Source: Haliotis cracherodii (lineage: Eukaryota). From it: a stretch of DNA of 64,000 nt. Each line of letters opens with the position of its first letter. The first letter of the stretch is position 1. The stretch is taken from assembly GCF_022045235.1 (NCBI RefSeq), contig NW_027266264.1:47306001-47370000 (forward strand), in the 5' to 3' direction. A model generated the notes under the pieces. The model made no database searches and was not told where the DNA came from. It saw only the letters and a list, made by a program, of their open reading frames with translations. This document shows positions 4,633-59,701 of this stretch, one piece after another. Both the position numbers and the translations under genes were made by a program.

Positions 4633-7600
4633 ATGGAAATGCGACGGAGAAGTCATCCCAGACTCCACTTCCGCCACTCCCACCCTCCTGTCGCCCCAGA
4701 CGACCCTCCCAGACTGTGTGTGCTGGATGTTTGCCTCAACCACGATCTCCTGGAAGCTCTCAAGGAGCAACAGCATGTCAAAGGTTTGATGTTACCTCGC
4801 TTTGCATCCTACTTTATTAATTCCATGCACGAGAGTCGACATTTATGCCGCTTTGAACAGTACTTCAGTAATCTCACAGCGTGGAAGCTTGATGTGGGGG
4901 CATAGGGGATGCACGCCTGACACGTGTATCACTGTGCTCACTGTGCTGACAAATCGAAACATAGAGTATTGTAGCGAATCATTAGATTCTTGTAGGCTTG
5001 CTCTACGCAAAGATTCATGGCACCTTAGACGAAACGGCCAACGTGCAAAGATGGAACAAAATGTCATTACTTACACAATAACCTCCATCTGACACTGATT
5101 GTCGTAGATGAATACCATCCTTGGACAATACCAGCCGGCAAATCATACATATTAGAAAGTCGTTGAGTTCACGGCTGTCACAGTGTGGTTTCACATATTA
5201 GTGCTCTGTCTAGCACAAGTGACTCTAGTATGGACTACCATTCATATATAAAAAAATTTCAGATTATGGTGTTCTTCTCCGTGTTCACTGGGACCAGACG
5301 GGAAGCCCTGATGGAGACATGTCAACTCTCACACTCTCGCATGTACCGACAGATAGTTCCTCCGCTGTTCTGAACGCCGATTATGCCATAGGAATTTCCA
5401 CGAATCATGCCGTCTTTGAAACCTTCATTACAAAAATGTTCACCACGTACAATGTCCAACTGGTAGCGGTTCAGTACCCGCCCATGGTGCTGACATTTCA
5501 ACACGGCCCAGGCTCCGGCATCAGTCAGCTTACTTCAGATAAAACCAGACTGCATGGCTTTGTGAAAGACCTCATAACGCAGTGTACAGTTGCCAAGCAC
5601 CAGATGCAGTTGAAGATAAACGTTAAGAGAGGGTCTAAGGTGGTGTTGCCCCCAAGACACACCTGTAGATGTCTTGAAGACGAGCCAGGAGCCGACAGAG
5701 GTTCGTTTGCTCCCTACACTGACAACAGTAGCCAGACAGGCGAGAACCACTATGCCAGCATGTGAGTATACACCCAGGCATGCAAGTCTACATCCAGGCA
5801 TGTGAGTATACACCCAGGCATGTGAGTACACACCCAGGCATGTGAGTATACACCCAGGCATATGAGTATAAACCCAGGCATGTGAGTCTACACCCAGGCA
5901 TGCGAGTCTACACCCAGGCATGTGAGTATACACCCATGCATGTGAGTCTACACCCAGGCATGTGAGTATATACTCAAGCATGTGAGTATACACCCAGGCA
6001 TGTGAGTGTACACCCGGGCATGTGTATATACATGTGAGTATACACCCAGGCATGTGAGTATACACCCAGGCATGTGACTCTACACCCAGGCATGTGAGTC
6101 TACACCCAGGCATGTGAGTCTACACCCAGGCATGTGAGTATATACTCAAGCATGTGAATCTACACCCAGGCGTGTGAGTCTACACCCAGGCATGTGAGTA
6201 TATACTCAAGCATGTGAGTATACACCCTCGGCATGTGAGTATACACCCAGGCATGTGAGTCTACACCCAGGCATATGAGTCTACACCCAGGCATGTGAGT
6301 ATATACTCATGCATGTGAGGATACACCCAGGCATGTGACTCTACACCCAGGCATGTGAGTATACACCCAGGCATGTGAGTATACACCCATGCATGTGAGT
6401 ATACACCCAGGCATGTGAGTATACACCCAGGCATGTGACACTACACCCAGGCATATGAGTCTACACCCAGGCATGTGAGTATATACTCAAGCATGTGAGT
6501 ATACACCCATGCATGTGAGTCTACACCCAGGCATGTGAGTATACACCCAGGCATGTGAGTATACACCCCCGCATGTGAGTATACACCCAGTCATGTGAGT
6601 CTACACCCAGGCATGTGAGTATATACTCAAGCATGTGAGGATACACCCAGGAATGTGAGTCTACACCCAGGCATGTGAGTATATACTCAAGCATGTGAGT
6701 ATGTACTCAAGCTAGTGAGTATACACCCAGGCATGTGAGTATATACTCAAGCATGTGAGTATACACCCAAGCATGTGAGTATACACCCAGGCATGTGAGT
6801 CTGCACCCAGGCACGTGAGTATATACTCAAGCATGTGAGTAGATACCCGGTCTAACATTTCGGCAGAGCTGATTCATTATCAATCATACGTCCATTTAGA
6901 ATTAAAATAGCCTGTTTTATTTTTCTAAACCTTTCCTTGACATATATGAATATAATGTTTTGAAAGTTTCACATATAAGTATTTCTATTGGTTTATACTC
7001 TCAGGTCAAGTCTTTCTTTGGACGATGAATCGATGGAAGTGGGTTGCAAAGTTCCATCGACGATTGAAGTGAGGTTTAAAACCGTGGAGACAGAACTTGC
7101 TGAGCAACGGCAGTTTATGGAGTCACAGTTCTGTGAACAAAAAGATCAAAATGACGAAATCAAATCAGCTCTGTTACAAATATCAGATGTTTTAGCACAG
7201 ACAAGTGAACAGGAATGTCGACGAAAAAGGGAAACCAATCTAGTAAAGAATATTCTTGATGAGCCAGATTTAATGCAGTTTTCTCTGGAAACAGAACCAT
7301 CAAAGCCCAGATCCAAAGAAACGCCGGACCAGAGTGAACACCAACCACACGTAGAAGTGCAGGATAAAACGGGGTCGCAGGGTGGTAAGGAACTGGAGGA
7401 AGAAGGCCACAAAAACGACCAACAAACGAGAGACGATCGAGAAGAAGAAGAGTCGAACGTGAAGGAGACAGAGGAGGAAGAAGAAGAGGACATGGTTAGT
7501 GAAGAAGAAAGTACGGATGACGACGAAGACGATGATGTAGAAAGTCAACCAGAGGAAGCCTATTCCGAAGATCCCTACCAACAGCGCAAAGGACCTATCA

Positions 7601-9215
7601 TCAAGGAAATTGACGGCAATGAACTTAGGAGTTTGTCACCTCCAAGAACGCAACAAGAAATGAGATTCACTACAACCAAAACTAAGTCGACTGTTTACAA
7701 CAGCACCTACAATCCTTCGAGTGATGGTTTGTCTGGAAATTACCCGTACGCGTCTCAAAATGACAGTCGATCTGTGAAACAAAGACAACCTGCCGTTTAC
7801 ACAGGAAATGTGTATAACGATGATCCGCCAGGGATGGATCCCTATAACAGCCACGCAGGTAATCTGTTGGATGGAGCTTTGAGGCATGAGACATTTCATA
7901 CAGACGAAGGAAAAGTAGACAAGTTTACAAGGTCCAAGACGCATATGTGTCTCCGTCATGGGAAGTATGTTACGACACAACAGACAGCTCTCGCCCTCAC
8001 CAGACCCGATGGGCAAGTACAGACGAAGAAGATGGTAACCAGTCACACAGGGGACCTTGGTGACATTGGATTAAGTGGGATGATAAATGAAGAACACAGG
8101 TGTGAGAGTGATGTGTATTCTGATCTGCAGACAGATGAACTGAACTTTGACATCAGCAACAGGGATCACCGGAGGAAGGATTCGTATACCATACAAGGGC
8201 AAGTCCTATATGTTTTGTTAATGAATAGTACCACTCTTAGTATATTATTCTGCACAGTACTGCGGTAGCAACTCATGAAATGACTGTGGCAGTGCACAGC
8301 TATTTATGTGAGTTGTATAATGTTGGTTTGTCGGTTAACGCCGCACTCAGCAATATTCCAACTATATGACGGCGGTCTGTACAATAATCCAGTGATTGAC
8401 ATCATGAGCATCGATCTACGCAATTGGGATCGATGAAATGTATCAACCAAGTCAGCGAGCCTGACCACCTAATCCCGTTAGCCGCCTTTTACGACGAGTA
8501 TGGGTTGCTGAAGACCTATTCTACCCCGTAATCTTTACGGGTCAGTTGTACTTTTTTACATATCATGTCATTTACGTATGAATTAATCTACGATGAGAAA
8601 ATGATGCATGTACTGACAAAGTCAATTATATTCAGACAAGCGATGATGACCAAGACAAGACTAGGCGATGAACCGGACGGAGAGCAGCGGATGCAGACAT
8701 TGCTAGCGAGCATGGTTGGGGACAACGTGGATGGGAACAGATTGTGGGAGAGTGTGGAAGAGGCTCAATCTGCAGGTACCGTCATGTTGTAGAGACCATC
8801 TCCCCTGTTACACTATGAAGCAGACAGGGCACTGCGGGTTTGCAGCTTATGATACACAGCACACAGGTAAAACATCAGGTGAAGATGAGTAACGTTGGCT
8901 GTGGAGAATAGTTGGATGAGAGACGTATATGGCAAGCTTGACTCCTAAAGTTTCTATGGCTTCGGTCCTGCCCCACACTGAAGCACATGTGGTGTCTCCC
9001 TTTGCTAGAAATATGCCTCTGTTCGACCAACAGTTACTGGGTACCCGGTAAGATGATATGGCAATGTGATTGTCAACATACAGGCGCCTCACAGGCAGCT
9101 TGCAGTTGGGGTGTATACTCCCCAGGTGAGAATGAGTGCACACTCATCAATTTACCGGATATAAATATGATGTAGAATGATGTAGCGGAATGGAATTTAA
9201 CGCATAATAAATGGA

Positions 9216-9271
<56 letters not shown>

Positions 9272-12200
9272 TTTTTTTTTTTATTTTTATTATTATTACA
9301 GACTCGAGCATGGTACCGAACGTGGAATCCGCCCTGGACACCGTCATCTGTATTGATACATCGGACAGTGTCAGGGGAGAAACGTTCGGCCACATAACAA
9401 AGATTCTCCACGACTTTATAAACGGTAAGTATTAATGGTCAACGCCGAAACCATGTTTCTCGTAATAGCGGAGTCTCTAAGATATCTGATTTCTTAAAGA
9501 AAAGAAGCTTGAAGCAACCGACGTGTCTTGTTCTCAGTACACTACAGCTGCTGGTGATGTGTTGTCTCAGTGCTTCGTCAGATTGACATGTTAGAGAGTT
9601 GCACAGATAAACGTATTCATAAATGAGGGTACAGTTTGGAGGCGCCTGCTAGGGGCTTTAGGGTAGCCTAGTGGTTAAAGAGTTCGCTCGTCACGCCAAG
9701 ACCATGGCTCGATTCTCCATATGGGTGCATTTGTGAAATGGATGACAAAGATTTTTTTTATATTCAGGCATTGAAGATATTGCCGAACAATACGAAATGG
9801 AGGAAAATATTGCTCTGGTTACTTTTGGAGGCCGTGCCCGAGTGCTGCACCAACTGTCAAATGACTACGGGAGTTTGAGGGATGCCATAGGTATGATGCC
9901 CTGTCCAGTCAGATAACTATATATATGCCTACATGCAATAGGAATATGTCCTCCATAAATCCTATAATGGTTGCTATCTTTTCTCAGAATGTATATTCAG
10001 TGGCATCATGTTCTTGGTTATATATATATGGAATCTGAATTCGACATGTTTGCCACCTAGATGACCTGACTCCGGGAGGGCCGTCCCCACTGCAGGAAGG
10101 GCTTCTGCTAGCGATGGCGTGTACAGGAAAAGGTATGTCAAACACCCTCAGCTACATCAGTATATGCTATGACTAACATTCGAAACCCTCAGTCTTATTA
10201 ATACGTTTTACCTTATGTATGATATATCTATTTCACAGTGTCGCACCGGTGAAGACCCGGGTTATAAGAGGCGACTAACGAGAATAGGTGGCCAGACTCG
10301 CTGACACACATACTCACGTGCATGGACATCGCTATTTAAGTGCAATAATCTTGAATGCGGCGTTCAACCCCATTTCACCTCACCTCACGATATGCAGTAT
10401 TCATTGTATTTATGTTATCGGTTGTATACCTGGACTATGGAACCCGCGAGGATTCGGGTTAGAATTGGTCTTTAACAACCCATGTCTGTCGTAAGAGGCG
10501 ACCAAAGGGATCGGGTGGTCAGTCATCGTAACCCGATTGCGTGGATCGATGCTCATGATGTCAATCTCTGGACTGTCTGGTTCAGACTCCATTATTTACA
10601 GACCGCCGTCATATTGCTGGAATATTGCGGAGTGGGGCGTTAAACAACAAACAAACAAAAGACAAAAATAGATTTAGTCGTGGCATGGGCAGGGAGAATA
10701 ATTCGGTTTGTTATTTTCTCGCACAAGATAATCAGCATTTGAGAAAAGTGATGGGTGTTAACGATTGCATACACGGGTATGTTGTAAACGAGCGTTACAC
10801 GTACTTCAGATATTCACATATGGGCGTTTGGTTCATGGTGAAATGTTACTGTTTGATTTCAGGAGGAATACTTAACATCGGAGGCAGTCTGAAACTCCCC
10901 CCTAGGTTAATCGTCATCACGGACGGTCTGGCCACTGGTACAATACCAGAGACAGCACAGGATGGACATATGGCTAGTGAACAGGTAAAGCGGTTAATAT
11001 GTCCTTGAACATATGTGAACTATGTGAACTTGTTTAGGACTGTGTTGGTTTCATCGAACGTTCACTTTCTATCCAATTGTTTCAGGAGAAGGCGGTACTG
11101 ACCCACGCTTTCAGCCAGCTGAGGAGGAGACAGCCGGGGGACTACGTGCCACACCCAGTTGTGGTGGTCCCCGTGGGCCGGTCTGACATGGTTGGTAAAC
11201 AGTCCCGGTATTAGACGTTTCAGTATACATTTGAATATTTATCGTATAGCTTTATCATGTTTAGTTGCAATATGTAAGTGTGTCATAAGAGTTATATATT
11301 TATATCATAATACGTTTATTTATATTGGTGATAAGTTCCCAACTGAGCTTTTATGAACCAGTTGCTGTGGAAACCAAATTTCAAAGAGACCATGCAAGGT
11401 TTCAGTTTCCAACATGTAACTGTTTCTAAGAAATTCATATAAATTTCAAAGTTACTCCATAGAAAGAATATCATAGTTAGGCTCAAATGCGCAATGCGCT
11501 GCTTGCGAAATTTCATCAAATTGTCTGCGTAAATGGAAAACCAACTGCATATCACCTCTTTAATATACGCGTTTAACTGGCATTAGTTTCAAACAATTAC
11601 ATTCTGACATTCCATTGTTCAAGACCATGATCATTTATCTTATATCTGAAACTGTTTTAAGGTGTTCCGTCTGGGGTGCACACTTCCTTCTATTGGTACA
11701 TATAATATGTAATCCTTCACCACCTCCATCTCCATCGCCATTGCCCCTCAGCACCTGTTCAACTGTTCAATCATTCCCCGATACAGAGTTTCCTGTTGAC
11801 GATGGGACGACTATGCGGAGGGATGCTGGTTGAGGGTACCGCCATTAAGAAGCTGTGCCGACATCAGCGCCTACATGTAAGGAGAGATGAAGCATAATCA
11901 CTAACCTGCTGTAATGACACAAATACCCTTACGATTGAAAGATGTGGCTACAGTGACACCACCGTGCTACTGTTTTGATTTACCTTTGTATATTCTCATT
12001 TACCTTTGTAGAAACTTGCGGGTGATTCTTTGGAAGTTATCAGGAATAAACGCCTGGACTCTGCCACATTTGAAGACCCGATGTTAAGACAACTTACAAT
12101 CAGTCTTTCACCATACACAAGACAGGACGAGATGGTAAGCTAAACGATTTGACTTTTATGTGAGTGAGTGAGTATGGTTTTTACGCCGCTTTTAGCAATA

Positions 12201-15200
12201 TTCTAGCAATATCACGGCGGGGGACACCAGGACATTTATGTAGTTAATCCATGAAATAGTACTCGGCACAAGTCAGAAAAACTCACACAACTCCCTCTAT
12301 GCATACGATATCCAGTAGCACCTATGTGATCAACTGTAGTCTTAGACTATGTAACACGCGATGGTCTTCAGCAACCCATGCTCGTCGTGAGAGACGACTG
12401 TCGGGATCGGGTGGTGAGGCTCGCTGACCTGGCTGATTCATGTCATCCTTACCCAATTGCGTAGATCGATGCTCATGATGTCTGGTCCAGATTGTCTGGT
12501 CCAGACTCATTATTTACAGACAGCCGCCATGTAGGTTGAATTTAGCGTCGTCAAACAAGGAACAAACAAATAAAACCTTGACTATGAAAAACGGAAAAAA
12601 AGTAACAAATGTTATATTTGGGATGACATTTAGTAATCCCATCCGGGATTAGGACTCACACTGCCAGAGTTTGACACCTAATCGCCAGCACACAAAGTCA
12701 GCGATCTAACCCACTCAGCAACCGAGGCTTCATAAAAATTAGAGTCCGACAACTCGAAGTCTAGATCACGTACTTTGTGTGCTGGCGATTAGGTGCCTAA
12801 CCCTGGCAGTGTGGGTTCGAATCCCAGATGGGACTTAACCGAGAATCTGTACTTTACTAAGAAAGTGTTTTCCCAAATACAACATTTGTTACATTTGATC
12901 ACTTTCTAAATGGCATTGTGTGTTCAGAGAAAATGTATCTCTGTGGCAGATTAGAAAAGTCTACTGTCTAATCAACTATACACCACCTTACATCCCTATC
13001 AATATATGCGATGTGTACATACGCTTACTGACATGAAGAGTAATGATAATCGTGTGCCTTCAGGAGGACGTCAGAGATCTCACACAGGAACACCTTCACA
13101 AGGTGGCAATTGTTTACGGTTCCAAATACTCGTTTGAAAACATATACGAAGTACCAAGTCTTCCCCCATTGGGTACACGAGTGGTGCGCGGCCCGGACTG
13201 GGTGTGGGGAAACCAGGACACTGAAGGAGCGGGGACTATCATTAACCACGGATTGGACGCACGTAAGGTTTCACTCAACTGTAAAAAGGAATCGCAGCAC
13301 TTGTGAATACCTTTGTAACAATCAGTGTTTATTTATCGCAACTGACTTACCATCTTGACTACCATTACGATATTTACCAAAAGTATATCGTGGGAATTAA
13401 TAAAAAATATTACATTCCTAAAAAAACAATGTTCGATAAAGAAAATCCCCTTTTGTTCACTTATTCTTCTCATCTCTGATGCTAAATGGTTTTCATTGTT
13501 ATACTTCTGTGATATTATTTCATGTTAGAGTACGTGTGGGTGTTCTGGGACAACGGCCATCTCAATGTGTACAGATTTGGTCAAAATGAGTGCTATGACG
13601 TCATTGGTGTTCATGACCAGCCACGTGTCCTGGACGGCAGCGAGAACGTTGACGTCGGATTGCAGGTCGAGAGAGGTAAGTGAGACTGAGACACAACGAG
13701 GATATATCACCATCACAAGATCATATAAGTATGTGCACGATATTCACCTAATCTAGATATAACTTTCTTATGTGTCGTTTAGCAGTAGGCTCTAAATGAC
13801 GACAATATGAGTTATATGACGATACATATGAGTTATATGGCCGTCGTGTATTCCTCTTTTCAACTAGGTCCGGACTGGCACATGACTTATGGCGACCAAG
13901 ACGGTGGCGCTGGTCGCACAGGGGTCATCATCCGAGTAAACCTTGATGGGAAAGTGATGGTAGGATGTTTCATCTTTCCACCATGTTTGTGTGTACTGTC
14001 TAGAATATTACAGTTGCGGAAATGCGTTAAAGAGGTATGTTAGTCAAGTAACTTCAAAATAAACGTCATCTTCCGTACATTTGAGTCACCATTATAAAGT
14101 TCCCATTTTCATTACCATTGCTCTTATGTGTTTTGTAGGTGCGGTGGCAGAATGGAAATATGAATGTCTACAGGTTCGGGGAAAACAACAGATTTGATTT
14201 ATCTATTCGGTGAGTGATCATGAACTGATACGAAATATGTCGCTCATCGCCCGCTTCACCTATTATTTGATAAAACAAAAAATCAGAACTCACCGTCTTT
14301 AATTTTCACGGGTAATGTAAGACACGGCAATTCGCGTCCTTTAGTTGTTCCAGCTGGTTCCACAATATTCGGCTTGAATGTGAACCTTGGTGAATCAGCT
14401 GATTGCCTGTGCTTTTGAGTCTCGGTTTGGAGCATGCAGATTACATGCAAGGATATCACTTAACAATTCCTGAAAGCGACTCGCACCAAATTCACGCACT
14501 CATTTATATTTCACAGAGATCCTGTCGCTTGTCTTCTGGAGTCAACAGCTAAACCAGATATAGAAAAACAAGTGACACATGAACAGTTACCCACCTCGGA
14601 ATCAGGTACGTCTGATAAATAACATGAACAGTTATCTAGAACTGGACTGGATACGTCTGATAAATAACATGGACAGTTACCTAGCACTGGACGTTGTACG
14701 TCTGGTAGATAACATGAACAGGTACCTAGAACTGGACCAGGAACGTCTGGTAGATAACATGGACAGTTTCCTGGGACTGGACTGGGTACGTTTTGTAGAT
14801 AACATGAACAGTTACCTAGAACTGAACAGTACGTCTATTATATAACATGGATAGTTATCTAGAACTGGACTGGATACGTCTGATAAATAACATGGACAGT
14901 TACCTAGCACTGGACTTTGTACGTCTGGTAGATAACATGAACAGTTTCCTGGGACTGGACCAGGTACATCTGGTAGATAACATGAACAGTTACCTAGCAC
15001 TGGACCAGATACATAAGGTAGATAACATGAACAGTTTCTTAGCACTTGACTAGGTACGTCTGGTAGATAACATGAACAGTTTCCTGGGACTGGACCAGGT
15101 ACGTCTGGTAGATAACATGAAGAGTTACCCAGCACTGGACCAGATACATACGGTAGATAACATGAACAGTTTCTTAGCAATGGACTGTGTACTTCTGGTA

Positions 15201-17246
15201 GATAACATGAACAGTTTCTTAGCAATGGACTGGGTACGTCTGGTAGATAACATGGACAGTTACCTAGCACTGGACTGGGTACGTCTGTTATATAACATGG
15301 ACAGTTACCTAGCATTGGACTAGGTACGTCTTTTAGATAACATGGACAGTTACCTAGCATTGGACTGGGTACGTCTGGTAGATAACATGGACAGTTTCCT
15401 GGGACTGGACTGGGTACGTTTTGTAGATAACATGAACAGTTACCTAGAACTGAACAGTACGTCTATTATATAACATGGACAGTTACCTGGCATTTGACTG
15501 GGTACGTCTGTTATATAACATGAACAGTTACCTAGAACTGGACTGGGTACGTCTGTTATATAACATGGACAGTTACCTAGCACTGGACCAGGTACGTCTG
15601 TTATATAATATGGACAGTTACCTAGAACTAGACTGGGTACGTCTGGTAGATAACATGGACAGCTACCTAGAACTGGACTTAGTACGTCTGGTAGATAACA
15701 TGGACCGTTACCTAGAACTGGACTGGGTACGTCTGGTAAATAACATGAACAGAATTCTAGCACTGGACTTGGTACGTCTGGTAGATAATATGAACAGTTT
15801 CCTGGGACTGGACCAGGTACGTCTGGTAGATAACATGAACAGTTACCTAGCACTGGACCAGATACATCAGGTAGATAACATGAACAGTTTCTTAGCAATG
15901 GCCTGGGTACGTCTGGTAGATAACATGGACAGTTACTTAGCACTGGACCAGGTACGTCTGGTAGATAGCATGGACAGTTACCAAGGACTGGACCAGGTAC
16001 GTCTGGTAGATAACATGAATAGTTTCCTAGAATTGGACTGGGTACGTCTGGTAGATAACATGAATAGTTGCCTAGCACTGGACCAGATACATCTGGTAGA
16101 TAACATGAACGGTTATCTAGAACTGGACTGGGTACGTCTGGTAGATAACATGAACAGTTACCTTGCTCTCGACCAGGTACGTTTGTTATATAACATGGAC
16201 AGTTACTTAGCACTGGACTAGGTACGTGGGTATAGATACGTTATATTAGCTTTGAGGCACACGATACACAAATGTCTACAAATGTAGAACTATGTTTTCG
16301 CTGAGTCGCACGCAAATAATTCTGATCAATTACTTTAGACGTACTGCAGAGATATTTATGTGTTGCCATATAACTTGTAGGACAACACATGGCTGGAGAG
16401 GCTGTGAGCTACCTATGGCAGAGGGAGGACAAGCTACAGGGATGGCAGAATTACTCCCCGTCCGACAGCGAAAAGATCACATCAGCCTACAAAAAACGCC
16501 CTGAAGGTTCTTGTTTGGTTCAGAGGAATGGTGAAAGGTGACATTTCTTGTCATTACTACGTTACTACTACGTTACTAAAATTGCAATCAGAGGAAGCTA
16601 ATCTGTAGTTTTACACTTTCCGTAGGAATGAATTATATTATCCGTCACAGTGGTATGCTGACAATGCCATATTGGGTTTATACTCTTGATATAAATGTTT
16701 ACACTTTCCTTTTCCACCCCCAGCTTCAGAGTTATGTTCAAGTCCATGCAAGAAAAATCAATTATAAACCAGTTAACCGTTCGAATCAGGAAATTGGCTA
16801 CAGGTAATGTTTTGAAACATAAACTTTAATAAGATTATTATGATTCGAAATACAATTATCAGTCTCGTGAATGGATATGTCCCTGTCATGTGAAAACGTT
16901 TATTAACGAAATTCATTTGACGATAAAAACATCCTTGTGTGACAGACTTTCTACTTATTATTACAACATGTTCTTGTTAAAGCTTACATTGCTCAAGGCA
17001 GATATATATATATATGCTCTGTAAACGTGGCACTAAGATATAAGTCATTAAGAACAATGTATTGCCGAGCAACAAATGATAGTGTTCAGGAAGAAGGATA
17101 CATTGTCGACTATGCAATACTTTCGCAGCAATATTAAAGCAAGCAAAGTCACAATGCAATTATCTAAGCAAGGATTCGGTTGAAATAATAATCAGGTTGT
17201 TTTGGCCTTATGTGTTTAATGGTTGTCATGTTTTCTTTCAGAATGA
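4633..17246 (+). CDS. Paralog A: N-terminal domain / coiled coil / VWA / 2x MIB-HERC2 / WWE protein (~1163 aa, 19 coding exons)
   Basis: Exons: 4633-4783, 5353-5761, 7005-8198, 8636-8775, 9302-9424, 9768-9890, 10061-10132, 10863-10984, 11086-11190, 11787-11876, 12012-12134, 13064-13262, 13529-13675, 13868-13959, 14139-14209, 14517-14605, 16381-16537, 16724-16803, 17242-17246. All introns are GT-AG except one GC-AG, phases are consistent, total 3492 nt. Motifs: VWA 'LDTVICIDTSDS...LIVITDG'; MIB/HERC2 'GTRVVRGPDWVWGNQD...VFWDNGHLNVYRFG..YDV' and 'VERGPDWHMTYGDQDGG...VRWQNGNMNVYRFG'; WWE 'YLWQREDKLQGWQNYS'. Confidence 0.88.
5755..6850. repeat. 20-bp minisatellite (~54 copies) whose unit contains a GTGAGT splice donor
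   Basis: Unit catgtgagtatacacccagg. The first unit overlaps the end of gene A coding exon 2 (5761/5762). Confidence 0.95.
8325..8545 (-). mobile_element. SINE-like repeat family 1
   Basis: Reverse-complement match to 34730-34965, including the tail 'ggaatattgctgagtgcggcgttaa'. Confidence 0.8.
9217..9300. repeat. (TAT)n / poly-T microsatellite at a 3' splice site
   Basis: A tattattat... run and a T-tract lie immediately before the acceptor of the first VWA exon (9302). Confidence 0.9.
10440..10655 (+). mobile_element. SINE-like repeat family 1
   Basis: Sequence 'acccgcgaggattcgggttagaattggtc...ggaatattgcggagtggggcgttaaacaacaaac' matches other copies in the window. Confidence 0.8.
12360..12572 (+). 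mobile_element. SINE-like repeat family 1
   Basis: Same core and (aaac)n tail as the other copies. Confidence 0.75.
12602..12927. mobile_element. foldback element with tRNA-like core (copy 2)
   Basis: Inverted halves: 'cacctaatcgccagcacacaaag' vs 'ctttgtgtgctggcgattaggtg', and 'gtaacaaatgttatatttggga' vs 'tcccaaatacaacatttgttac'. Homologous to 2634-2882. Confidence 0.75.
14576..16228. repeat. 45-bp minisatellite (~36 copies) derived from an exon/intron junction of gene A
   Basis: Unit acatgaacagttacctagaactggactgggtacgtctggtagata. The first unit is the end of exon 14517-14605 plus its donor (cag|gtacgt). Confidence 0.95.
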
Positions 17247-18696: not shown

Positions 18697-18822
18697 CTGA
18701 GTGAGGTGGGTTTTACGCCGCTTTTAGCAATACCACCAGACACTAGAAGTGGGCTTCAAACAAACTGTCGTGGAGAATAGAACGATTGAAGGATTTAACC
18801 AATAGGCTACACCCACCGCCCC
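18697..18822 (-). mobile_element. tRNA-derived SINE (family 2), internally deleted
   Basis: Reverse complement shows head ggggcggtgggtgtagcctattggttaaa and tail gctaaaagcggcgtaaaa. Confidence 0.7.
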
Positions 18823-24890: not shown

Positions 24891-24963
24891 TTTATAATAT
24901 ACCTTCCAATCTTTGAACCTGTCGTGAGTGAAACATGCTTATTCCATTTTCAGTAAGAATACC

Positions 24964-30900: not shown

Positions 30901-31398
30901 ACAAGAGATGACGTCCCCCCACTGGGCAGTAGAGTAGTTCGTGGGCCAGACTGGAAGTGGGGAAACCAAGACTCCGAGGGGCCGGGGACAGTCATCAACC
31001 ACGATACTGATGGCCGTAAATTCAATACCATTCAGATCACTGACATATTAAATGGGCGTATATATATATATATATAAGGACAAATGCTACCGTTTGGCAA
31101 CACTATGGTATATTGCTACCTCTGAGCGACATTACCAAATATTACAAGCATATAATACAAAACTGAGGCAAATGTTCACTCGGTGTACATGTAATATATA
31201 ATAAAATAATAAAGTCCACGTTAGTCCAACATCTTCTTTATATCAGTTTATCGACTCCAGGTTCGATCTGATTACATTTCTAGGTGTGTAAGCACCATGA
31301 GATTGACCATCACTTCGGGCTTTACTCCCACATCAAGCTTACACGTCGCGATATAAGTGGAATGATGTTCAAAGCGGAGTCGAATTCAAATCACTCAC

Positions 31399-31445
<47 letters not shown>

Positions 31446-47500: not shown

Positions 47501-50500
47501 CTAATGAGGTACGAGTTGATGTCCTTTCCATGTTAGTGAACAGTAATGTGACGTTAAGTTGTTTTGAAAGTTCTACAATTGACTCATCGTAAAATTTTTA
47601 TCTTCAGACTTCATAAAAAAGAGATCGTTTTTCGCATGTTATTAGTCCGTTTGGTTAATTTCCTCATATATCAGCCTGATATTAATTGTATTAATATTGA
47701 TGTTCACAAATGTCCGGATATTATTGTGTATGCGTGTGATGATGCCATTTCAGTCCTTTCTGAGGTCACTGGCAGAAATAGGCCATGGGCAGTACATGGC
47801 AGGGGGCCTCTCAGTTGTACAGAAATTGAGTCAGTATCAGCGAATACAGGTAAAGGAAGCAGAGTTTTCTTTTCCTTCAGTTACAACGTTTCAAAATATA
47901 CATTCCAGGTTTTACTGGTACACTTGGGGTTAAGCAAAACGTTAACTCAAAAACAATGATCGATGAACTGTAGCTATATAGGTACATACTGAAATGGTTA
48001 TGGTACTTGTATGCGTGCATTAATGCAAACTGTTCAGTTACACACACTTATATTACTATACACGTATCCAACATAACTGAAATCTGTAAAATTTTGTATT
48101 ATCCTCCAGGAGGCTGTGGGCAAAATATTTGTATGTCTCCAAAGACAGATTGGTCCTGAGACTGGAGATATTCGTCACGATATCGACACCATCATGGGCG
48201 CGCTGGTGGGGGACATGGAAGAGGAGTACAAGGTATTTGAGACGCTCACATTTAGTCACATAGTTCTCTCCCGAACTAAATAGCATTCTGAAATCATTTT
48301 ATAATATTCCATCTCAGTAACAACTGTTTTAGCGATGCTGAATTTTGGGAAAATGTCATGGCTAAACTAGTAACAGTAGGACAGTGCCGGACGGGTTCCT
48401 TAACATTGTTTCAAATAACTTATGTCAAGAAAATATATTTCTATAAAACGTTTGTATTCTGATCACGTTGTAGACAGAAGTTATTAAAAATGTCATGGCA
48501 AAGCTCGAAGGTAAAGAAGGATACGGAAACGAAGAACAGGGCCCTGATGGGTTTGACTACATAGTTGAAGTGGATGGCCTTCCTCCCCTGGGAACTAGGG
48601 TGACCAGGGGACCGGACTGGCACTGGGGGAACCAAGACACGGAAGGCCCGGGCACAATCATCAACCATTATGATAAACATGGAGGGGGAAAACGTAATGA
48701 TCATTTTTATTGTCTTAAAAGGCTTGTCAGCTTTCTTTTCCATATTTTCAAAGTACAGGGATATTGCGACTTAGTGTGTCGTATGGTACTGTCATTTAAC
48801 ATGGCATATATAAAGAGTATATTATTTTGTGACCGATAAATCAAGTGAACACTTGTCATAAACAGCCAAGGTAAATACATGGTTTCATACCCTAACACAG
48901 ATATTGTTCAGTGATATTTCTGCCTAGATTTGCTGTATGTCCAGTGGGACAACGGGACCTTCAACCAGTATCGGTATGGTTTGGACGGTGAATATGATGT
49001 GTGGCCAGCCCCTGATCAACCGAGGCTTATTGCGTCTGACATGCTTATTGAAGTGGGTTGTGAAGTGACGAGAGGTATGAAAAGCATATTTTAAGGTCCT
49101 TAAAGAATGCCTTTTATTATTATTGACACTGATGCTTTAGCTTTTTATCCATTTATTCAATTAATTAATTAATTCAATAAAATGTCAACATTGTTTGAAA
49201 TTCTAACTGACACATGCTGTGAAATACGAAAATATCTGCCTTTGTGCAGGTCCTGATTGGAAGGATGACTACGAATACCAGGATGGAGGACCTGGATGTG
49301 TTGGTGTCGTCATCAGAAAGAATGATCAGGGAATGGTGAAGGTAAGGGTCCAGCTATTTGATATTCAGGGGTGGGGGCTGTTATTTGTCCGGAGACTAGA
49401 TATTTTTTCAAGAACAGATGCAAAACATTTAATGAAAATTAACACCTTGCAACAATATATTTGTTATTGCCGACAATGTCTCTTTTTTCAACAGTATGAA
49501 GCATAATAATTTTTTTCATGAATTTTCGGGGACAATTTACTTTTTCGATATAATCCCTGCCCATTTATAGTCACATCGGAAAAATTGCAGGGATATCGTG
49601 ACGAGAATATATTATATCATTGATAATAATAAATCTAAACCTGTCGACGATGGACATTACAACAAAATTGGACAGAACATTTGAAAGAAATAACCGTTAT
49701 TCAGTTGACTATGGGCTTAATCACCTTCAAAACGGGTTCCTTTTTGACAAAACGTCCACAGGGAGACACCATTATCACCTCTTATCTGTCCTACCAGGTT
49801 CGCTGGAAACAGAACTGTTACATAGGCTCATACAGATATGGTGCCGACGGAAAGCTGGACCTCACTGTAAGGTATTGTGTTTCTAGCTACTTGTTCTACC
49901 ATTTAAAATATACAGATTCTGATCAAAGAGCACCCGAAATCAGAACTTGACATTTATAAACAAAGAAGCATGTATTACTCTGAAACAAAAACTGAATTAT
50001 CTCGGAATTAAATGAGAGTTTCAAACGGATATTTTCCAGAGACCCGGGTGACATTCTGACCGAACTCACCAGATCAGATCAGGGGAAGCTCTCTACCAAC
50101 GTCACAATGCCGGAGGAAGGTACACATGGTTTGACTGATAACAATATATCCATAATTTCACTAATATGGTTGAATATATATTAATGAAGATCACTCCTCT
50201 TTAACACACCCATATAACAATGTTATTAAGTTGAAGTAAGGCGACCTGTAATGCGATGATAACACATGGCTAGACCAGTCACTAATGTAGTAGTTTTCTA
50301 AATCTAAATCTACAATAATCTTACAGTCAAGGTACAAGAAAAGGGTACGTGGGTGTGGCACTGGAAGGACGAAAGAAACCAATGGCAACAATATACAGCT
50401 CAAAATAACAAAAAGCTTGAAGACCAATATCGTAAACGGTCAACTGGGTCATGCCTTGTACAGAGAGCTGGCAAAAGGTAAAATAATATGATACCAATTT

Positions 50501-50644
50501 TCAGTTACCCTGTTTTACATTGACGTCACCTCTATAGAGTGGGGTTAACCAGTAGATGTTTGGTGGATCTGATAAATCAAATTTGTCAGACAAGTATTGT
50601 GAGGTTCGACTCGTCTGACTGACACTTACTTGGACCGCGCGCGC

Positions 50645-50706
<62 letters not shown>

Positions 50707-51115
50707 ACAAGCATACATACAAGCATACATACACACACCTGCACGCACGCTCACACGCACGAAAGCATGCATGCCATATTTGTGTTGATGATAAAAATGA
50801 TTCGTTATATTGCACATTACGTCCATAGAAGTTCTTTAACATTGCCTTGATACAGCATATTTGACTTAACTAAGTTGACAGAGAATACTTGATTACTGTG
50901 CATGTGTTGGTGTTTACAGTTACAGAGTACTCTTCAAGGAAATGTTTGAGAAGGATTTAAGTAATGAATCCAGAAGAGAAGTGAAGAGAACATGTAAGTG
51001 GTATTATTTTTTTCTTAAGTGAAGGTATTTCTGCGTCCGATGAAAATCTAAATCAAATCCTGGTTGTTGTTTAAATCTTGTCTTACATTCTTTTGCAGGT
51101 GTTGACAAGAAATGA
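41534..51115 (+). CDS. Paralog C: N-terminal domain / coiled coil / VWA / 2x MIB-HERC2 / WWE protein (~1114 aa, 22 coding exons)
   Basis: Exons: 41534-41762, 42540-43029, 43411-43466, 43726-44401, 44606-44728, 44858-44913, 45057-45152, 45384-45503, 45608-45730, 45864-45938, 47047-47168, 47404-47508, 47754-47849, 48110-48232, 48474-48693, 48928-49074, 49250-49341, 49798-49871, 50040-50119, 50327-50477, 50920-50993, 51099-51115. Phase-consistent, total 3345 nt. Motifs: 'LDTILCLDTSSS', 'LIIITDG', 'GTRVTRGPDWHWGNQD', 'YVQWDNGTFNQYRYGLDGEYDV', 'GPDWKDDYEYQDGG', WWE 'WVWHWKDERNQWQQYTAQNNKKLEDQY'. Confidence 0.87.
42250..42470 (+). mobile_element. SINE (family 3)
   Basis: B-box 'gggttcgaatccc' plus the family-3 body and tail. 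Confidence 0.75.
43120..43322 (+). mobile_element. SINE-like repeat family 1
   Basis: Family-1 core with (aaac)n tail. Confidence 0.8.
46114..46392 (+). mobile_element. tRNA-headed SINE (family 3), near full length
   Basis: Head ggggcactggtggcccagtcgtctaaggc, B-box gggttcgaatcc, tail aaagcggcgttaaacccaactca, and flanking direct repeat agatgtac. Confidence 0.8.
46410..47000. repeat. 33-bp minisatellite (~18 copies) in a gene C intron
   Basis: Unit cacctgattagtgtatagatgtagtaatattat. Degenerate units also lie at 45970-46080, on the other side of the SINE. Confidence 0.92.
47234..47376. other. assembly gap (143 N) within a gene C intron
   Basis: Run of N. The flanking exons join in phase and match consecutive exons of A and B, so no exon appears to be missing. 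Confidence 0.98.
50636..50762. repeat. compound microsatellite (GC)n(GCAC)n(AT)n(CATA)n
   Basis: Directly visible simple repeats. Confidence 0.9.
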
Positions 51116-55423: not shown

Positions 55424-58400
55424 ATGTCAAAGAATGTATTACATAAAGCTTGTAATACCGACGAGACGTATACTAACTATAAAGATTTTGATATTATATC
55501 AACGTCTAAACATGCCATTATTCAAATGGGAAATGAATGCACAGCATACACCATCAATGTCACCCGTTCCTTCCTGGATGCCATCAAAGACAAAGGTGGA
55601 AGTTTGACGTGTGAGTTGCATTTTCCTTAATGATTACATTTTGTCCAGTAAGCCGTGTATTACATAAACACTGTTGTGTCGAATTTGAAGACACCTACCT
55701 GAATATTCGAGTTATTCTATTAAATGTTCGACACAACGGTGTATGGCTGTATTAAGTACTGACAAAGGCTCGTAAATAATGGCTCACTAATTATAAATCA
55801 TTGTATGGGTCGAGGGTTACGTCAGTGTGGAATACAATGCAGATAAGACAAGCGTATCCGAAAATGTATTAGCACAGCCATGAGTCATATGTATGTGTAA
55901 TGAATGAAAACTTTGCGGGAAGGGTCGTCATCTCCAGCCATATCAATTTCATCAATATTCAAAGAAGCGAATGATGTCACATTTTGAACAAAAACTATAA
56001 CACATCTGTATTTTTACACCAACAGTTTCAGGGAATCAACAACCTCTGCTACGGTTGAGTTGGAAAGGCAATACAGAAATATCACATGACTGCATCACGA
56101 AATGGAAGGTGGATTTCTTGTCACTTTTCAAAGGATGTAAGAGTGCGATTATGCAGAAAATCTCTGCAGAGATATTTCATCCTCTTCGACTGATTATCGA
56201 ACGAATATTTCATGAATACGACGCCCAACTGTCAGCTCTAATTGGTGGTAGTCTGATATTTGTGTTCATGCACAGAAACAGACAGGATGCGGATAAGATG
56301 ATCGAGAAGAAACAGGCGATACACAAGATCTTCCAGCAACTCTTGGGAGATATTGGCAATAGGGAGGTTAAGTTTGCATTGTCTGCTGAGAGGTAGGAAA
56401 CGTTTGCCCTTTTCTCTGTGCTGTATGATAGAAATGTTCAACACACACATGTATGTGTTTAGAAAATATCACTAGATCAATACAATATACAATTGTAATA
56501 GTTTCCATACAATTCATTTTATTCAGTTACCGTTATTAAACTTCCAGTGATTGTTATTTCTGTATGAATCAAATCAATAGTGAAAGAAGTGATGTGACTC
56601 TGACAGCTTCCTGACAAAGTAGGTATATATTACTCTTTGAGTAAAGTTATTAACAAAGTGGTGTTTTTCTTATCTTATCCATTTCAGATAAGGGTTTCAT
56701 GATCTGTACTCACCAGTTGATAGCGTTCTGTTGTTCCAATTACAGATCAGTATATTCAGTCACTACACCAAAACTGCTCAAGGTGTCCGAATTGTATTTG
56801 AGAATTGGTATTCTAATTGGTAAACTAGTTGGACTGAAATCGTTTTTTTTCTGACTTTCACTCAAGAAACCAGTTTTGGAGAAACAGTTTCTGATATGGT
56901 GATGCATGTAGCTAGTACTTAGCCGTCACCAAACCATGAAGTACAAATGCAACAGCTGTCATAATGGGAACACACCGCTGAGGTTGTGTCCACATTCTTT
57001 ATTTCAGAATACCATAAAAAATATCCGTGTTAATTTAATGAGTTGCATAATGATGATAAGTTTCAACAGATAAGTAGCTAAATGCCCAGGCATAATTCTC
57101 GATACCACGGCCTCCAAGCATAATGATAATTACATAGGTCGATAGTAGGTGGTACCCCTTAATAACAAACGAAGTGGGCTAGCACTATAAACGACTGATA
57201 CAAGCAGCCACACACACACGTGCATGCAAGTCGCAGTGTTAGTTCAGAAATCTTGGACGCGATGTTAAACCCCATTTCACCTCACCTCACCTTGTGTTAA
57301 TTGTGTTAATAGTATGTTATCTGTATGAACGATCTGCCTTGATTTTCTAGGGTTGTCAAGTCATCCCAGTGGTTTCAAAGTTTGTCTGAGGGTAAGGATT
57401 GTTTAGTTACCTCCTCAAGTCACAGCACATTTTTAAAATATTTTTTTTGTGGGGAAATATGCTATATTTTGAATATCAAATTTTATATTTATTGAATCTA
57501 TAGTTTGTTTCGAATTGTAAGTAATAAACATCGACTTGCCAAACATCTGGATAGTTTTGTGACAGATTCCACGGGGATTTATCCATCGGACGAAAGGAGC
57601 GAGTCGCTCATACCGAGCAGCAGAATTGACAGTATTGAGATGGAACTGAAGCAGGTTCGCGAGTCATTGTGTGAAATGAAAAATGTATTGCTCAAAATGT
57701 CGGACAAGATCCTCAGCGAAACTGACGCGCCGGAGGGGACACCCTTGAGACGGCCAGAAGAACAGCCCACATCTGCTTTGGTGCAGGACCTGAAGGGTTT
57801 TCTAAATACGAATAGCTCTGGTTTTCAAGTGCCGGAATCAACTGTGGCACCAGCTTTCTTGTCAGAGCGAAGGCCTCTCCATGAGCAATGCACAGCAGAG
57901 CCTGATGGCATGGGGTAAGTATTACAGATATATAATAGCAAATCACCAACCAGTGTTTTAGAAAAGACCACTATAGCTGAACCCCATTGAATAAACCACA
58001 CTCGATAATGAATTTATGTTTCATAAACGGGTGTGCAAATTGGCGTCAATATGTTTAGTGCGATTCCTTAAATTATGTCAAATTGAGGCAACCTCCAGGG
58101 GACGTATTGTACGCTTACCTAAGTGAAACAAAGGTACAAGTTTTGTGACCTCTGTCAAAGTAAGTCAAAATGAGAATAGGATCATTTGTGTCGTTACATT
58201 AAGCATTATGATGACATGGTGTCCATACCGACCCGTCTGTCTACTTGAATAGGTTTACATGACCGTGACCAATCGTTCAGCTAGATGGTTTATGAGCAAT
58301 ACAAATTTGTGTTGTCATCAGGGCAAGAGTTTCCCATGGCAAAACAAATTTGACAACATTCATCCCAGAACAGCGTGCAACAAAACCAGAACCGTCCCAT

Positions 58401-59701
58401 GCAGAATCCAAGCCACGTGATCATATAGAAGAAATACAACGACGAGATGATAGAAGCGGAATGGAATCGGCGAAGGAAATGTATGGATTCCAATCTGAAT
58501 GTCAGTTCCTCTACTTGGTTAATCTTCAAGAATGGGATTTCAAATTATGCCAGCCTTTCACATTAAATGTTTGAAATAATAGTTTACATATATCGTACTT
58601 TTGGCTTTGATATTTTCAGCCCCGAATACAAAAGACAACAGGACAGATTTGACCTGGCAATAGCAAGTATGAATTCAGTTTTTAGTTTTTCGACACTGGT
58701 CACAAGGAACACTTACATACACCTCACCTACATGGTTTGGTGGGTTTTGAATTGCAACATACAGATGTACATACATGTCATATCTAGATACATGTCCTAG
58801 ATCTTCCAGTGATTGCTTGTAATCTTGTTATTTTATTGACATCGTTACAATATATTATGTGCTCAATAGTGTTTACTAATGGCTTTCTGGAAATTGACAC
58901 AATATACTCTGTGTATTTACAAAGCAATGTAAGTCCCTTTCAGAGAACTACCAACGTGCAGAGATGTTGTTGAGCAACCTGAGCGTCTGTAACGTAGGGG
59001 ATGGTCACGGTGATCCAAGAGTCAACCGCTTAGCAGCTTCAGTTGCTGTTGCATTAGAACAAGGTAGGATATAGATATACATCAGTATTCAGTAGTTTCC
59101 GTTTCTTTAATGAAAACATAATTCTTAAACTATCCGTGCTTCGAAACACATAAAGGGATGTACTTCTTTATGAAACTACACATTCTTGCCTCTTCAGAAG
59201 ATCCGAAGCCACCTAAAGCTCAGGCACAGGACACTGTGTTATGTCTGGATGTATCTGAAAGCTTGGGACAGAAAGGATTTGAAGAAGTGAAGCAAGCTGC
59301 ACACATGTTTGTAAATGGTAAGTGTTGTTTCCTGCTGTCAGTGGCTACAGTGTAGGCCGTGGAGTTGTTTCATATTCAACAAGATACATAACAGGGATGG
59401 CCCCAGCTCGTCATAAAACTCAACATGCTCAATGTGAGGTATTCCTCCAACTAATCGGAAGGCTAAATGTCTTTAATGTGAGGGATCAACCCCTCCCCAG
59501 AAGAATTATATGAATGTCCTCAATGTGAACTATTCCCCAATACCATCGAAATGTTGAATGTACATAATTTGACTTCAGGTATAGAGACTGTGGCCGAGCA
59601 GCATGGATTGGAGGAGAACTTAGCTTTGGTCGTAATGGGAGGAGGGGTCAGGGTGGTCAGACAATTGACCAATGACTACACATCTATCAGAGATGCTATT
59701 G
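55424..59701 (+). CDS. Paralog D (5' part only): N-terminal domain / coiled coil / linker / first half of VWA
   Basis: Exons: 55424-55610, 56026-56392, 57351-57391, 57566-57914, 58322-58480, 58620-58666, 58944-59063, 59198-59317, 59579-59701. The phase series is the same as gene C. Motifs: 'QDTVLCLDVSES' and 'GIETVAEQHGLEENLALVVMGG...LTNDYTSIRDAI'. Downstream exons were not found before the window end. Confidence 0.8.

What the first reader, a model, noticed from the sequence alone, without database searches (positions are those of the whole stretch)
4633..59701. Tandem cluster of four divergent genes encoding an uncharacterised VWA + 2x MIB/HERC2 + WWE adaptor architecture
Seen: four co-oriented paralogs with conserved exon lengths (123,123,72-75,119-122,105,90-96,120-123,199-220,144-147,89-92,71-74 nt) and conserved phases, but strongly diverged sequence. 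A-C are complete and open. Known: MIB/HERC2 domains are interaction modules of the E3 ligases Mind bomb, HERC2 and HECTD1. WWE domains occur in E3 ligases (Deltex, RNF146, HUWE1, TRIP12) and PARPs, and some bind poly(ADP-ribose). Intracellular VWA domains mediate metal-dependent protein binding. Here these modules are joined with no RING, HECT or PARP catalytic domain, and no signal peptide or TM segment is evident. I know no characterised protein with this order. Inference: a lineage-expanded family of cytosolic scaffolds or decoys linking ubiquitin and ADP-ribose signalling. Old tandem duplication with a hypervariable N-terminal half is the pattern typical of invertebrate innate-immune families.
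Basis: partly seen in the sequence, partly recalled or inferred. Interest (0 to 1): 0.9.

Follow-up and report, generated by a model that had tools for sequence, protein, structure and literature searches.

The report
Abalone VWA-MIB-WWE scaffold gene cluster
Four neighbouring black-abalone genes, part of a 24-gene cluster, encode unstudied enzyme-less cytosolic proteins that join a metal-dependent binding domain to two Mind-bomb-type domains and a WWE domain; relatives in other animals carry a caspase or CARD at the front, which points to cell-death or immune signalling.

Summary
The window is Haliotis cracherodii DNA. Gene B encodes RefSeq XP_071117092.1, with 1060 of 1061 residues reproduced. 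Genes A and C are open. Gene D is not truncated: it runs past the window end. The N gap lies inside an intron of gene C, and the exon junction across it is seamless.

The four genes are part of about 24 copies in 433 kb, all at this one locus. Each window gene has 1:1 orthologs in H. rubra and H. asinina, so the duplications are old.

The order is: alpha/beta head, long helix, disordered region, VWA with an intact MIDAS motif, helical linker, two MIB_HERC2 domains, WWE. No RING, HECT or PARP domain, signal peptide or TM segment was found. Relatives carry a caspase (an unnamed relative that groups with caenogastropods) or a CARD (Lingula) in front of the same module. This gives independent support for a death or immune signalling role.

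The ubiquitin and ADP-ribose link remains inference. The WWE has Glu where Deltex has its conserved Gln. A TRADD-N identity for the head is an unconfirmed lead. No paper describes the family. The scan had not noted this family on other DNA.

The parts
4633..16799 (+). Gene A, 18 coding exons. Head domain: 4633-4783, 5263-5761. Large helix and disordered exon: 7005-8198, then 8636-8775. VWA: 9302-9424, 9768-9890, 10061-10132, 10863-10984, 11086-11190. Linker: 11787-11876, 12012-12134. MIB1: 13064-13262, 13529-13675. MIB2: 13868-13959, 14139-14209. Then 14517-14605. WWE: 16381-16537, 16724-16799.
   Evidence: Homolog-guided models against H. rubra P0153/P0004. No stop; 77% identity to P0004; 84% over VWA to WWE. 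The donor at 8198 is GC. Boundaries are not transcript-verified.
24964..35515 (+). Gene B, which encodes XP_071117092.1 (P0003). Exons: 24964-25093, 25681-26101 (head); 26453-27340, 27464-27618 (helix and disordered region); 28126-28248, 28375-28497, 28652-28723, 28973-29091, 29269-29373 (VWA); 29964-30053, 30592-30711 (helical linker); 30817-31015, 31524-31667 (MIB1); 33560-33648, 34147-34217 (MIB2); 34507-34598; 35042-35201, 35437-35515 (WWE).
   Evidence: The joined translation equals P0003 residues 1-1060 of 1061. The last residue lies on a short 3' exon that I could not place. Pfam on P0003; AF2 model.
41633..50957 (+). Gene C. Exon 1 starts at ATG 41633. Head exon about 42497-43024. Large exon about 43740-44372. 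Then 44604-44728, 44858-44913, 45057-45152. VWA: 45384-45503, 45608-45730, 45864-45938, 47047-47168, 47404-47508. Linker: 47754-47849, 48110-48232. MIB1: 48474-48693, 48928-49074. MIB2: 49250-49341, 49798-49871. Then 50040-50119. WWE: 50327-50477, 50882-50957.
   Evidence: VWA to WWE is 534 aa with no stop and 83% identity to H. rubra P0007. The N-terminal exon boundaries are approximate.
47234..47376 (.). Assembly gap (143 N) inside the intron between gene C exons 47047-47168 and 47404-47508.
   Evidence: Donor GTAAGG follows 47168 and acceptor TTTAG precedes 47404. The junction aligns to ortholog P0007 without gap or shift. The same intron in A and B is 101 and 177 nt and holds no exon.
55424..64000 (+). 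Gene D, 5' part. Exons 55424-55610, 56026-56392 (head), about 57522-57843, 58925-59063, VWA 59198-59317 and 59579-59700. The gene continues outside the window to about window-equivalent 73,111, with the rest of VWA, two MIB and WWE.
   Evidence: tblastn with H. asinina P0013 on the window plus L001/L002. The model is rough.
9302..9424 (+). First VWA exon of A, carrying the MIDAS motif D-x-S-x-S (DTSDS). The equivalent exons are B 28126-28248 (DTSGS), C 45384-45503 (DTSSS) and D 59198-59317 (DVSES).
   Evidence: Translations. D550 and S552, and D657-G658 of the TDG strand, are invariant in 42 family members.

Best explanation
These are intact genes of a lophotrochozoan family of large (about 1000-1200 aa), non-catalytic, cytosolic scaffold proteins. 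The family is strongly expanded in abalone, with about 24 tandem copies at one locus.

Shown: each protein has a constant C-terminal binding module. This is a VWA domain with an intact metal-ion-dependent adhesion site, a helical linker, two Mind-bomb-type MIB_HERC2 beta-barrels in tandem without the ZZ finger of Mind bomb, and a terminal WWE domain. In front of it lies a fast-evolving part: a ferredoxin-like alpha/beta head domain, one long helix and a disordered, partly acidic stretch.

Inferred: the constant module docks partner proteins or a small-molecule or modification signal. VWA would act through its MIDAS, the MIB pair through short peptide motifs as in Mind bomb, and WWE through an ADP-ribose-like or other ligand. 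The N-terminal part would be the output or adaptor end. In relatives that position is occupied by a caspase with an intact His/Cys dyad (an unnamed relative that groups with caenogastropods) or by a CARD (Lingula). I therefore read the family as adaptors or regulators of caspase- and death-fold-type signalling in cell death or innate immunity. The abalone paralogs would offer different heads on one sensing and docking platform.
For: - Gene integrity and architecture.
- MIDAS conserved.
- VWA fold: TMt 0.70-0.74 to TEM8 and CMG2. Profile hits to MIB1 at 2.9e-24, HECTD1, DTX1 WWE at 2e-10 and Rpn10 VWA at 6e-7.
- No catalytic Pfam domain in 42 members.
- No signal or TM stretch.
- Caspase fusion P0047: Peptidase_C14 at E 3.6e-54, with SHG at 107 and QACQG at 149. 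It sits inside the gastropod part of the tree with 99 support.
- CARD fusion in Lingula P0181 at 27.2 bits, above the cut-off.
- 24 copies at one locus.
- 1:1 orthologs of A, B and C in H. rubra and H. asinina at 100 support. Paralog distances are 1.0-1.4 against about 0.2 for orthologs.
- The head and disordered parts diverge most.
- Language-model features place the heads of A and B, which are only about 20% identical, next to mollusc clusters partly annotated TRADD-like_N.
Against: - There is no expression, induction or interaction data for any member.
- The death or immune link rests on domain fusions in distant relatives: one species with CARD and one unnamed transcript-like contig with a caspase. 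The abalone proteins themselves carry no death-fold or caspase domain.
- The head fails Pfam TRADD-like_N and a profile-profile test against NCOA6 TRADD-N, at probability 0.2%.
- The WWE departs from the Deltex motif at two conserved positions, so ADP-ribose binding cannot be assumed.
- No caspase or PARP gene lies in or beside the cluster.
- All paralogs being retained as 1:1 orthologs fits stable, divided functions more than a fast arms-race turnover.
Confidence: 0.5

Rival explanations
1. These are ubiquitin or poly(ADP-ribose) pathway adaptors or decoys with no special tie to death signalling. The MIB pair and the WWE would mimic the substrate- and PAR-recognition modules of E3 ligases (Mind bomb, HECTD1, Deltex, RNF146, HUWE1, TRIP12). 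The proteins would bring E3s or PARylated proteins to VWA-bound partners, or compete with them. They could be proteasome-associated.
For: The best solved relatives of the domains are all E3 ligase modules (MIB1, HECTD1, DTX1, TRIP12, HUWE1). The VWA's best profile hit is the proteasomal ubiquitin receptor Rpn10. Elsewhere in this genome MIB_HERC2 exons lie on the same strand 13-20 kb from PARP catalytic exons (C20, C15). That hints that MIB pairs work with ADP-ribosylation in abalone.
Against: Domain names alone carry this reading. The WWE has Glu at the position of the conserved Gln. The Rpn10 hit is modest (31 bits) and other VWA structures match the fold equally well. This reading does not explain the caspase and CARD fusions or the variable head.
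Confidence: 0.3
2. This is a largely redundant or decaying tandem array: copies persist by chance, and many are on the way to becoming pseudogenes.
For: Two of 24 VWA exons carry a stop. Introns are full of minisatellites, and one overlaps the end of an exon in gene A.
Against: A, B and C are open over 1000-1200 codons. Each has a conserved ortholog in species separated by far less divergence than the paralogs. Domain cores and MIDAS residues are invariant.
Confidence: 0.05
3. These are secreted or matrix VWA proteins acting in adhesion or clotting.
For: The VWA domain resembles the extracellular VWA of CMG2 and TEM8 in sequence and fold.
Against: There is no signal peptide or TM segment. MIB_HERC2 and WWE are intracellular domains. 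Relatives carry CARD or caspase.
Confidence: 0.02

Closest known systems
Mind bomb 1 (MZM region; PDB 4XI6/4XI7) and HECTD1 MIB domain (2DK3)
   Same: Two MIB_HERC2 beta-barrels in one chain. The profile E-value is 2.9e-24 to MIB1 and 5e-16 to HECTD1. In Mind bomb these domains bind short peptide motifs of Notch ligands (title of 4XI7, and established knowledge).
   Different: There is no ZZ finger between the two MIB domains and no REP, ankyrin, RING or HECT domain, so there is no ligase activity of its own.
WWE domains of Deltex-1 (8R5N), PARP11, TRIP12, HUWE1 and RNF146
   Same: C-terminal WWE fold with both tryptophans conserved. The profile E-value is 2e-10 to DTX1, 1e-6 to PARP11 and 1.6e-6 to TRIP12. 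All 42 members hit Pfam WWE.
   Different: The family consensus has Phe and Glu where DTX1 has the Tyr and Gln of its Y..D...M.Q motif. Genes A, B and C all have Glu. From memory, which is not a test, these are iso-ADP-ribose contact positions in RNF146. No RING or PARP domain is attached.
Intracellular and extracellular VWA domains: Rpn10/PSMD4, CMG2/TEM8, TFIIH p44, Ku80
   Same: Rossmann-like VWA fold (TMt 0.6-0.74) with an intact D-x-S-x-S ... TDG MIDAS.
   Different: None of these is joined to MIB_HERC2 or WWE. Sequence identity is only 13-18%.
Lineage-specific expansions of TRADD-N and death-fold adaptor proteins in marine invertebrates (Kaur, Iyer, Burroughs, Aravind 2021, PMC8195603)
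   Same: The theme is the same: a large lineage-specific expansion with a variable adaptor domain joined to binding modules. That paper reports cnidarian proteins with DED + TRADD-N + vWA. Language-model features place the abalone head next to TRADD-like_N clusters.
   Different: That paper says molluscs other than bivalves have only the NCOA6-type TRADD-N and never mentions WWE. The abalone head fails the Pfam and profile-profile tests for TRADD-N.
Family relatives with other heads: caspase-VWA-MIB-2xWWE (P0047, unnamed Logan contig) and CARD-VWA-2xMIB-WWE (Lingula anatina XP protein P0181, and P0183)
   Same: The same VWA-MIB-WWE module, alignable throughout and within one tree.
   Different: Their N-terminal position holds a recognised death-pathway domain. 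The abalone genes have the unnamed alpha/beta head plus helix instead.

Membership tests
VWA domain (PF00092/PF13519) with functional MIDAS | Profile match above the curated cut-off | tested here: met
   P0003 (gene B product) scores VWA_2 49.7 bits against a cut-off of 27, and VWA 38.2 against 23.8. All 42 members hit VWA_2. Single exons alone fall below the cut-off.
VWA domain (PF00092/PF13519) with functional MIDAS | D-x-S-x-S loop and the downstream Asp of the TDG strand | tested here: met
   The motif reads DTSDS, DTSGS, DTSSS and DVSES in A to D. D550, S552, D657 and G658 are invariant in 42 members. Metal binding itself was not tested.
VWA domain (PF00092/PF13519) with functional MIDAS | Alpha/beta Rossmann-like fold | tested here: met
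   AF2 gives pLDDT above 90 over residues 540-725. Foldseek gives TMt 0.70-0.74 to TEM8 and CMG2.
MIB_HERC2 domain (PF06701) | Profile match above the cut-off, two copies | tested here: met
   81.1 bits with 2 stretches in P0003. The exons of A hit at 2.7e-6, 2.6e-5 and 6.7e-4. MIB1 matches at 2.9e-24.
Mind bomb / HERC2 / HECTD1 E3 ligases | RING or HECT catalytic domain | tested here: not met
   There is no RING, HECT, ZZ or ankyrin hit in any of 42 members at E up to 1.
WWE domain (PF02825) | Profile match above the cut-off | tested here: met
   P0003 scores 21.2 bits against a cut-off of 21.1, which is marginal. Orthologs and paralogs score up to 42.7 bits. 42 of 42 members hit, with best E 9.4e-24. 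DTX1 matches at 2e-10 by profile.
PAR / iso-ADP-ribose-binding WWE (RNF146, Deltex type) | Conserved Tyr and Gln of the ligand pocket (the Y..D...M.Q motif) | tested here: not met
   The family consensus aligns F and E to the Y and Q of both DTX1 WWE repeats. A, B and C have E. The role of these residues is recalled from the RNF146 literature and was not checked here.
TRADD-N superfamily (PF20694/PF09034/PF13820), for the N-terminal head | Profile match | tested here: not met
   PF20694 finds 3 loci in the genome, none in the cluster. It is not among the 25 families listed of 49 when the 42 members were scanned at E up to 1, nor among P0003's own hits. hhalign of the head profile against a 67-sequence NCOA6 TRADD-N profile gives probability 0.2%.
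TRADD-N superfamily (PF20694/PF09034/PF13820), for the N-terminal head | Fold like the TRADD N-domain (1F3V) | tested here: inconclusive
Death-fold (CARD) or caspase-bearing proteins | CARD or Peptidase_C14 domain in the protein itself | tested here: not met
   These domains occur only in relatives P0181, P0183 (CARD) and P0047 (caspase). None is found in Haliotis members.

The most novel reading that the evidence does not exclude
The VWA-2xMIB-WWE module may be a conserved lophotrochozoan sensing platform that gates caspase or death-fold outputs in response to a modification or nucleotide-derived signal. Its altered WWE pocket (Glu for Gln) could read a ligand other than iso-ADP-ribose. Abalone would have diversified this platform into about 24 paralogs whose heads are very divergent TRADD-N domains. 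That would be the first TRADD-N-type expansion in a gastropod, a group said to have only the NCOA6 copy.
Probability: 0.15. Interest if true: 0.8.

Novelty: new variant of a known kind. Interest (0 to 1): 0.55.

Why it matters
Molluscan innate immunity and cell-death control are poorly mapped, and abalone suffer mass mortality from withering syndrome, herpesvirus and Vibrio. This is a well-defined, conserved and wholly unstudied protein family. It joins three interaction modules otherwise known from ubiquitin ligases, PARPs and the proteasome. In relatives it is wired directly to a caspase or a CARD. That gives a concrete, testable entry point into how lophotrochozoans couple protein-modification signals to death or immune outputs. 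It also gives a natural series of about 24 old paralogs for asking what the variable head does.

Tried and rejected
No junction in the window is confirmed by reads.
- Logan fragments: the fragments near-identical to the window are single genomic exon ORFs from relatives, not transcripts. P0155 is only the large exon.
- Head domain: Pfam on the head and the disordered part found nothing.
- TRADD-N tests: Pfam in the genome and hhalign against NCOA6 TRADD-N were both negative. The fold searches were generic.
- Complex prediction: a homodimer of the long helix (P0003 residues 196-275, two copies) returned no verdict, with score 0.02. This is evidence neither way.
- Partner genes: a search for a caspase or PARP gene inside the cluster found none.
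- Literature: searches by domain combination, Haliotis + WWE, TRADD-N + vWA + WWE + MIB, and six LOC identifiers found no paper on the family.
- Rejected readings: a secreted VWA protein (no signal or TM) and a pseudogene array (open frames and retained orthologs).
- Corrected model: my first model for gene A used two tiny exons (55 + 23 nt) inside a minisatellite. It was replaced by 14517-14605 and 16381-16537, which align better.
Exons were searched one by one by reference, and full-length analyses used database proteins (P0003 and others). Joins were made only inside scripts, to check frames and to place A and C in the tree.

Full report
ORIGIN. The window is G000:C1:47306001-47370000 of a 1.18 Gb assembly. 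Its contig is 89,134,964 bp long. That is the length of the contig that carries RefSeq XP_071117092.1 of Haliotis cracherodii, and gene B's exons match that protein at 100%. So the DNA is black abalone.

OBSERVATION. A six-frame self-comparison shows four colinear series of short + strand coding pieces. A profile of the most conserved exon, the second VWA exon (alignment A1), was searched against 1.84 billion proteins. It found full-length family members of 830-1280 aa in four Haliotis species, and relatives in other molluscs.

With these as guides I placed exons by tblastn and then chose GT/AG junctions.

- Gene B's joined translation equals XP_071117092.1 for 1060 of 1061 residues. The last residue must lie on a short 3' exon that I could not place.
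- Gene A is open and 77% identical to its H. rubra ortholog in the model (3534 nt, 1178 aa). After the correction of its last exons it is 18 exons, 3573 nt and about 1191 aa.
- Gene C begins at ATG 41633 and is open from VWA to WWE.
- Gene D is not incomplete. Its remaining VWA, MIB and WWE exons lie 0.2-9 kb beyond the window end.

THE GAP. The N run 47234-47376 lies between a GTAAGG donor after 47168 and a TTTAG acceptor before 47404. The two flanking exons are neighbours in A and B, with introns of 101 and 177 nt. Across the junction the residues align to H. rubra P0007 with no gap and no shift. The gap is therefore intronic and does not touch the reading frame. I did not try to fill it.

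SIZE OF THE FAMILY. The A1 profile finds 24 copies of the exon in the genome. All are on C1 between 47,284,477 and 47,717,670, with 15 on + and 9 on -, and two carry a stop. MIB_HERC2 and WWE exon hits are spread through the same 433 kb. In H. rubra at least a dozen family genes (LOC124280402 to LOC124280419) sit on one 1.35 Mb scaffold.

A maximum-likelihood tree of the VWA-to-WWE part was built from 44 rows. It puts A, B and C each with one H. rubra and, for A and B, one H. asinina protein at 100 support. Ortholog path lengths are about 0.2, and the nearest paralog is 1.0-1.4 away. The duplications therefore predate the split of these abalone species, and the copies have been kept.

ARCHITECTURE. 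Single exons give weak but correctly ordered Pfam matches. Full-length proteins give VWA_2/VWA, two MIB_HERC2 stretches and a C-terminal WWE, all above the cut-offs. All 42 aligned members have the three families and none has a RING, HECT, ZZ, ankyrin or PARP domain.

AlphaFold2 on P0003 with 42 homologs gave the following:
- a confident alpha/beta head (residues 1-166);
- one long helix (201-270);
- a disordered stretch (270-467);
- VWA (540-725, pLDDT above 90);
- a three-helix linker (729-793);
- two beta-barrels (about 815-950);
- WWE (990-1060).

Foldseek and a PDB profile search agree. They find MIB1 MZM, HECTD1, CMG2/TEM8, Rpn10, TFIIH p44 and Ku80 for the VWA and MIB parts, and DTX1, PARP11, TRIP12 and HUWE1 for the WWE. 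The MIDAS motif is intact in A to D and invariant in the family. No 19-residue window exceeds a Kyte-Doolittle mean of 1.65, and no N-terminus is hydrophobic.

Divergence is very uneven between paralogs: head 16-33% identity, disordered part 10-20%, VWA 39-51%, MIB 43-57%, WWE 25-49%. Orthologs keep 57-89% throughout.

THE WWE POCKET. In the HMMER alignment to both WWE repeats of DTX1, the family consensus has F and E where DTX1 has the Y and Q of its conserved motif. A, B and C all carry the Glu. From memory of the RNF146 work, these are ligand-contact positions. I could not verify that here, so I treat ADP-ribose binding as open.

THE HEAD. No Pfam family matches it. A separate AF2 model of the exon-2 part (139 aa, pLDDT 84) is a ferredoxin-like beta-alpha sandwich.
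- Foldseek finds nothing at E up to 1e-3. The TRADD N-domain 1F3V is rank 15 but has the best TM-score.
- ESM Atlas features place the heads of B and A, which are about 20% identical to each other, next to mollusc clusters in which 14-18% of members are TRADD-like_N. Bona fide TRADD, NCOA6 and DEDD2 clusters come further down the list.
- Against this, PF20694 finds only three loci elsewhere in the genome, one of which is the NCOA6 ortholog. A profile-profile comparison with 67 NCOA6 TRADD-N domains is flat.

I keep TRADD-N as a lead at about one chance in three.

RELATIVES WITH TELLING HEADS. Lingula anatina P0181, and the near-identical P0183, have a CARD in front of VWA-2xMIB-WWE. P0047 is a 1032-aa ORF on a 4026-nt Logan contig. 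That is too compact for a gene that has about 18 introns in gastropods, so it is probably a transcript. It has a full caspase domain (E 3.6e-54) with the SHG and QACQG catalytic motifs, followed by VWA, MIB and two WWE. It groups with Pomacea and Babylonia at 99 support.

These fusions are the only evidence, independent of domain names, for what pathway the module serves. They point to caspase or death-fold signalling. Kaur et al. 2021 (PMC8195603) describe the same evolutionary pattern for TRADD-N and death-fold adaptors in sessile marine invertebrates, including DED-TRADD-N-vWA proteins in cnidarians. They state that non-bivalve molluscs have only the NCOA6 copy, and they do not mention WWE or MIB domains.

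MECHANISM. Shown: these are intact, conserved, non-catalytic, soluble multi-domain proteins with an intact MIDAS. Inferred: the C-terminal module docks partners or reads a signal, and the N-terminal part is the output. The rival reading is a pure ubiquitin or PAR adaptor. It draws on the E3 and Rpn10 affinities of the domains, and on MIB exons lying next to PARP exons elsewhere in the genome.

WHAT COULD NOT BE DONE. I had no codon alignments of orthologs, because no CDS was available. I ran no ligand or partner test. The one complex job gave no verdict.

VERDICT. The family is larger and older than stated and is unstudied in the literature available here. It is best called a new domain architecture within the known class of lineage-expanded invertebrate signalling adaptors.

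Noticed in passing
window 5758-6841, 14577-16227, 31692-33130, 46519-46993, 59808-60411: Introns of all four genes hold long minisatellites (units of 20, 45, 66, 33 and 49 nt, with 12-55 copies), and most lie beside an exon end. The first starts 3 nt before the donor of gene A exon 2, and its unit contains GTGAGT. The second starts inside exon 14517-14605, and its unit contains AGGTACGT, so the donor site is repeated about 37 times.
   Followed up: partly
window 90-2180: A 60-nt satellite with 35 copies at 91% identity and strong C over G skew lies upstream of gene A. It produces long spurious ORFs in three frames.
   Followed up: no
window 18814-19669 and 21298-24639: The intergenic space between A and B is mostly satellite (86-nt and 55/97-nt units). 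It ends about 325 nt before gene B's start codon.
   Followed up: no
window about 2434-2595 (-), 8284-8468, 10413-10710, 12418-12547, 34752-35063, 36622-36886, 43143-43343: A short interspersed repeat of about 150-250 bp occurs in both orientations in introns and between genes. It is probably a SINE or MITE.
   Followed up: no
G000:C20:4419042-4469198 (-) and G000:C15:3466761-3543045: MIB_HERC2 exon pairs lie on the same strand 13-20 kb upstream of PARP catalytic exons, at least twice on C20 and once on C15. This suggests abalone genes that join two MIB domains to a PARP domain. WWE and PARP exons also pair up on C14 at 14.46-14.53 Mb.
   Followed up: no
G000:C12:15.06-15.65 Mb: Dozens of caspase (Peptidase_C14) exon hits fall within about 600 kb, which points to a large tandem caspase expansion.
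   Followed up: no
L005:2755-5757 (G000:C34:53615754-53618756): A single 1001-codon open frame starts with an NCOA6-type TRADD-N domain (PF13820, E 1.7e-28). This is the abalone NCOA6 ortholog's large exon.
   Followed up: partly
P0047 and P0083 (Logan contigs of 4026 and 3683 nt): Full-length family ORFs sit on contigs barely longer than the ORF. They are probably assembled transcripts from unnamed molluscs and are the only hint of expression for the family.
   Followed up: partly
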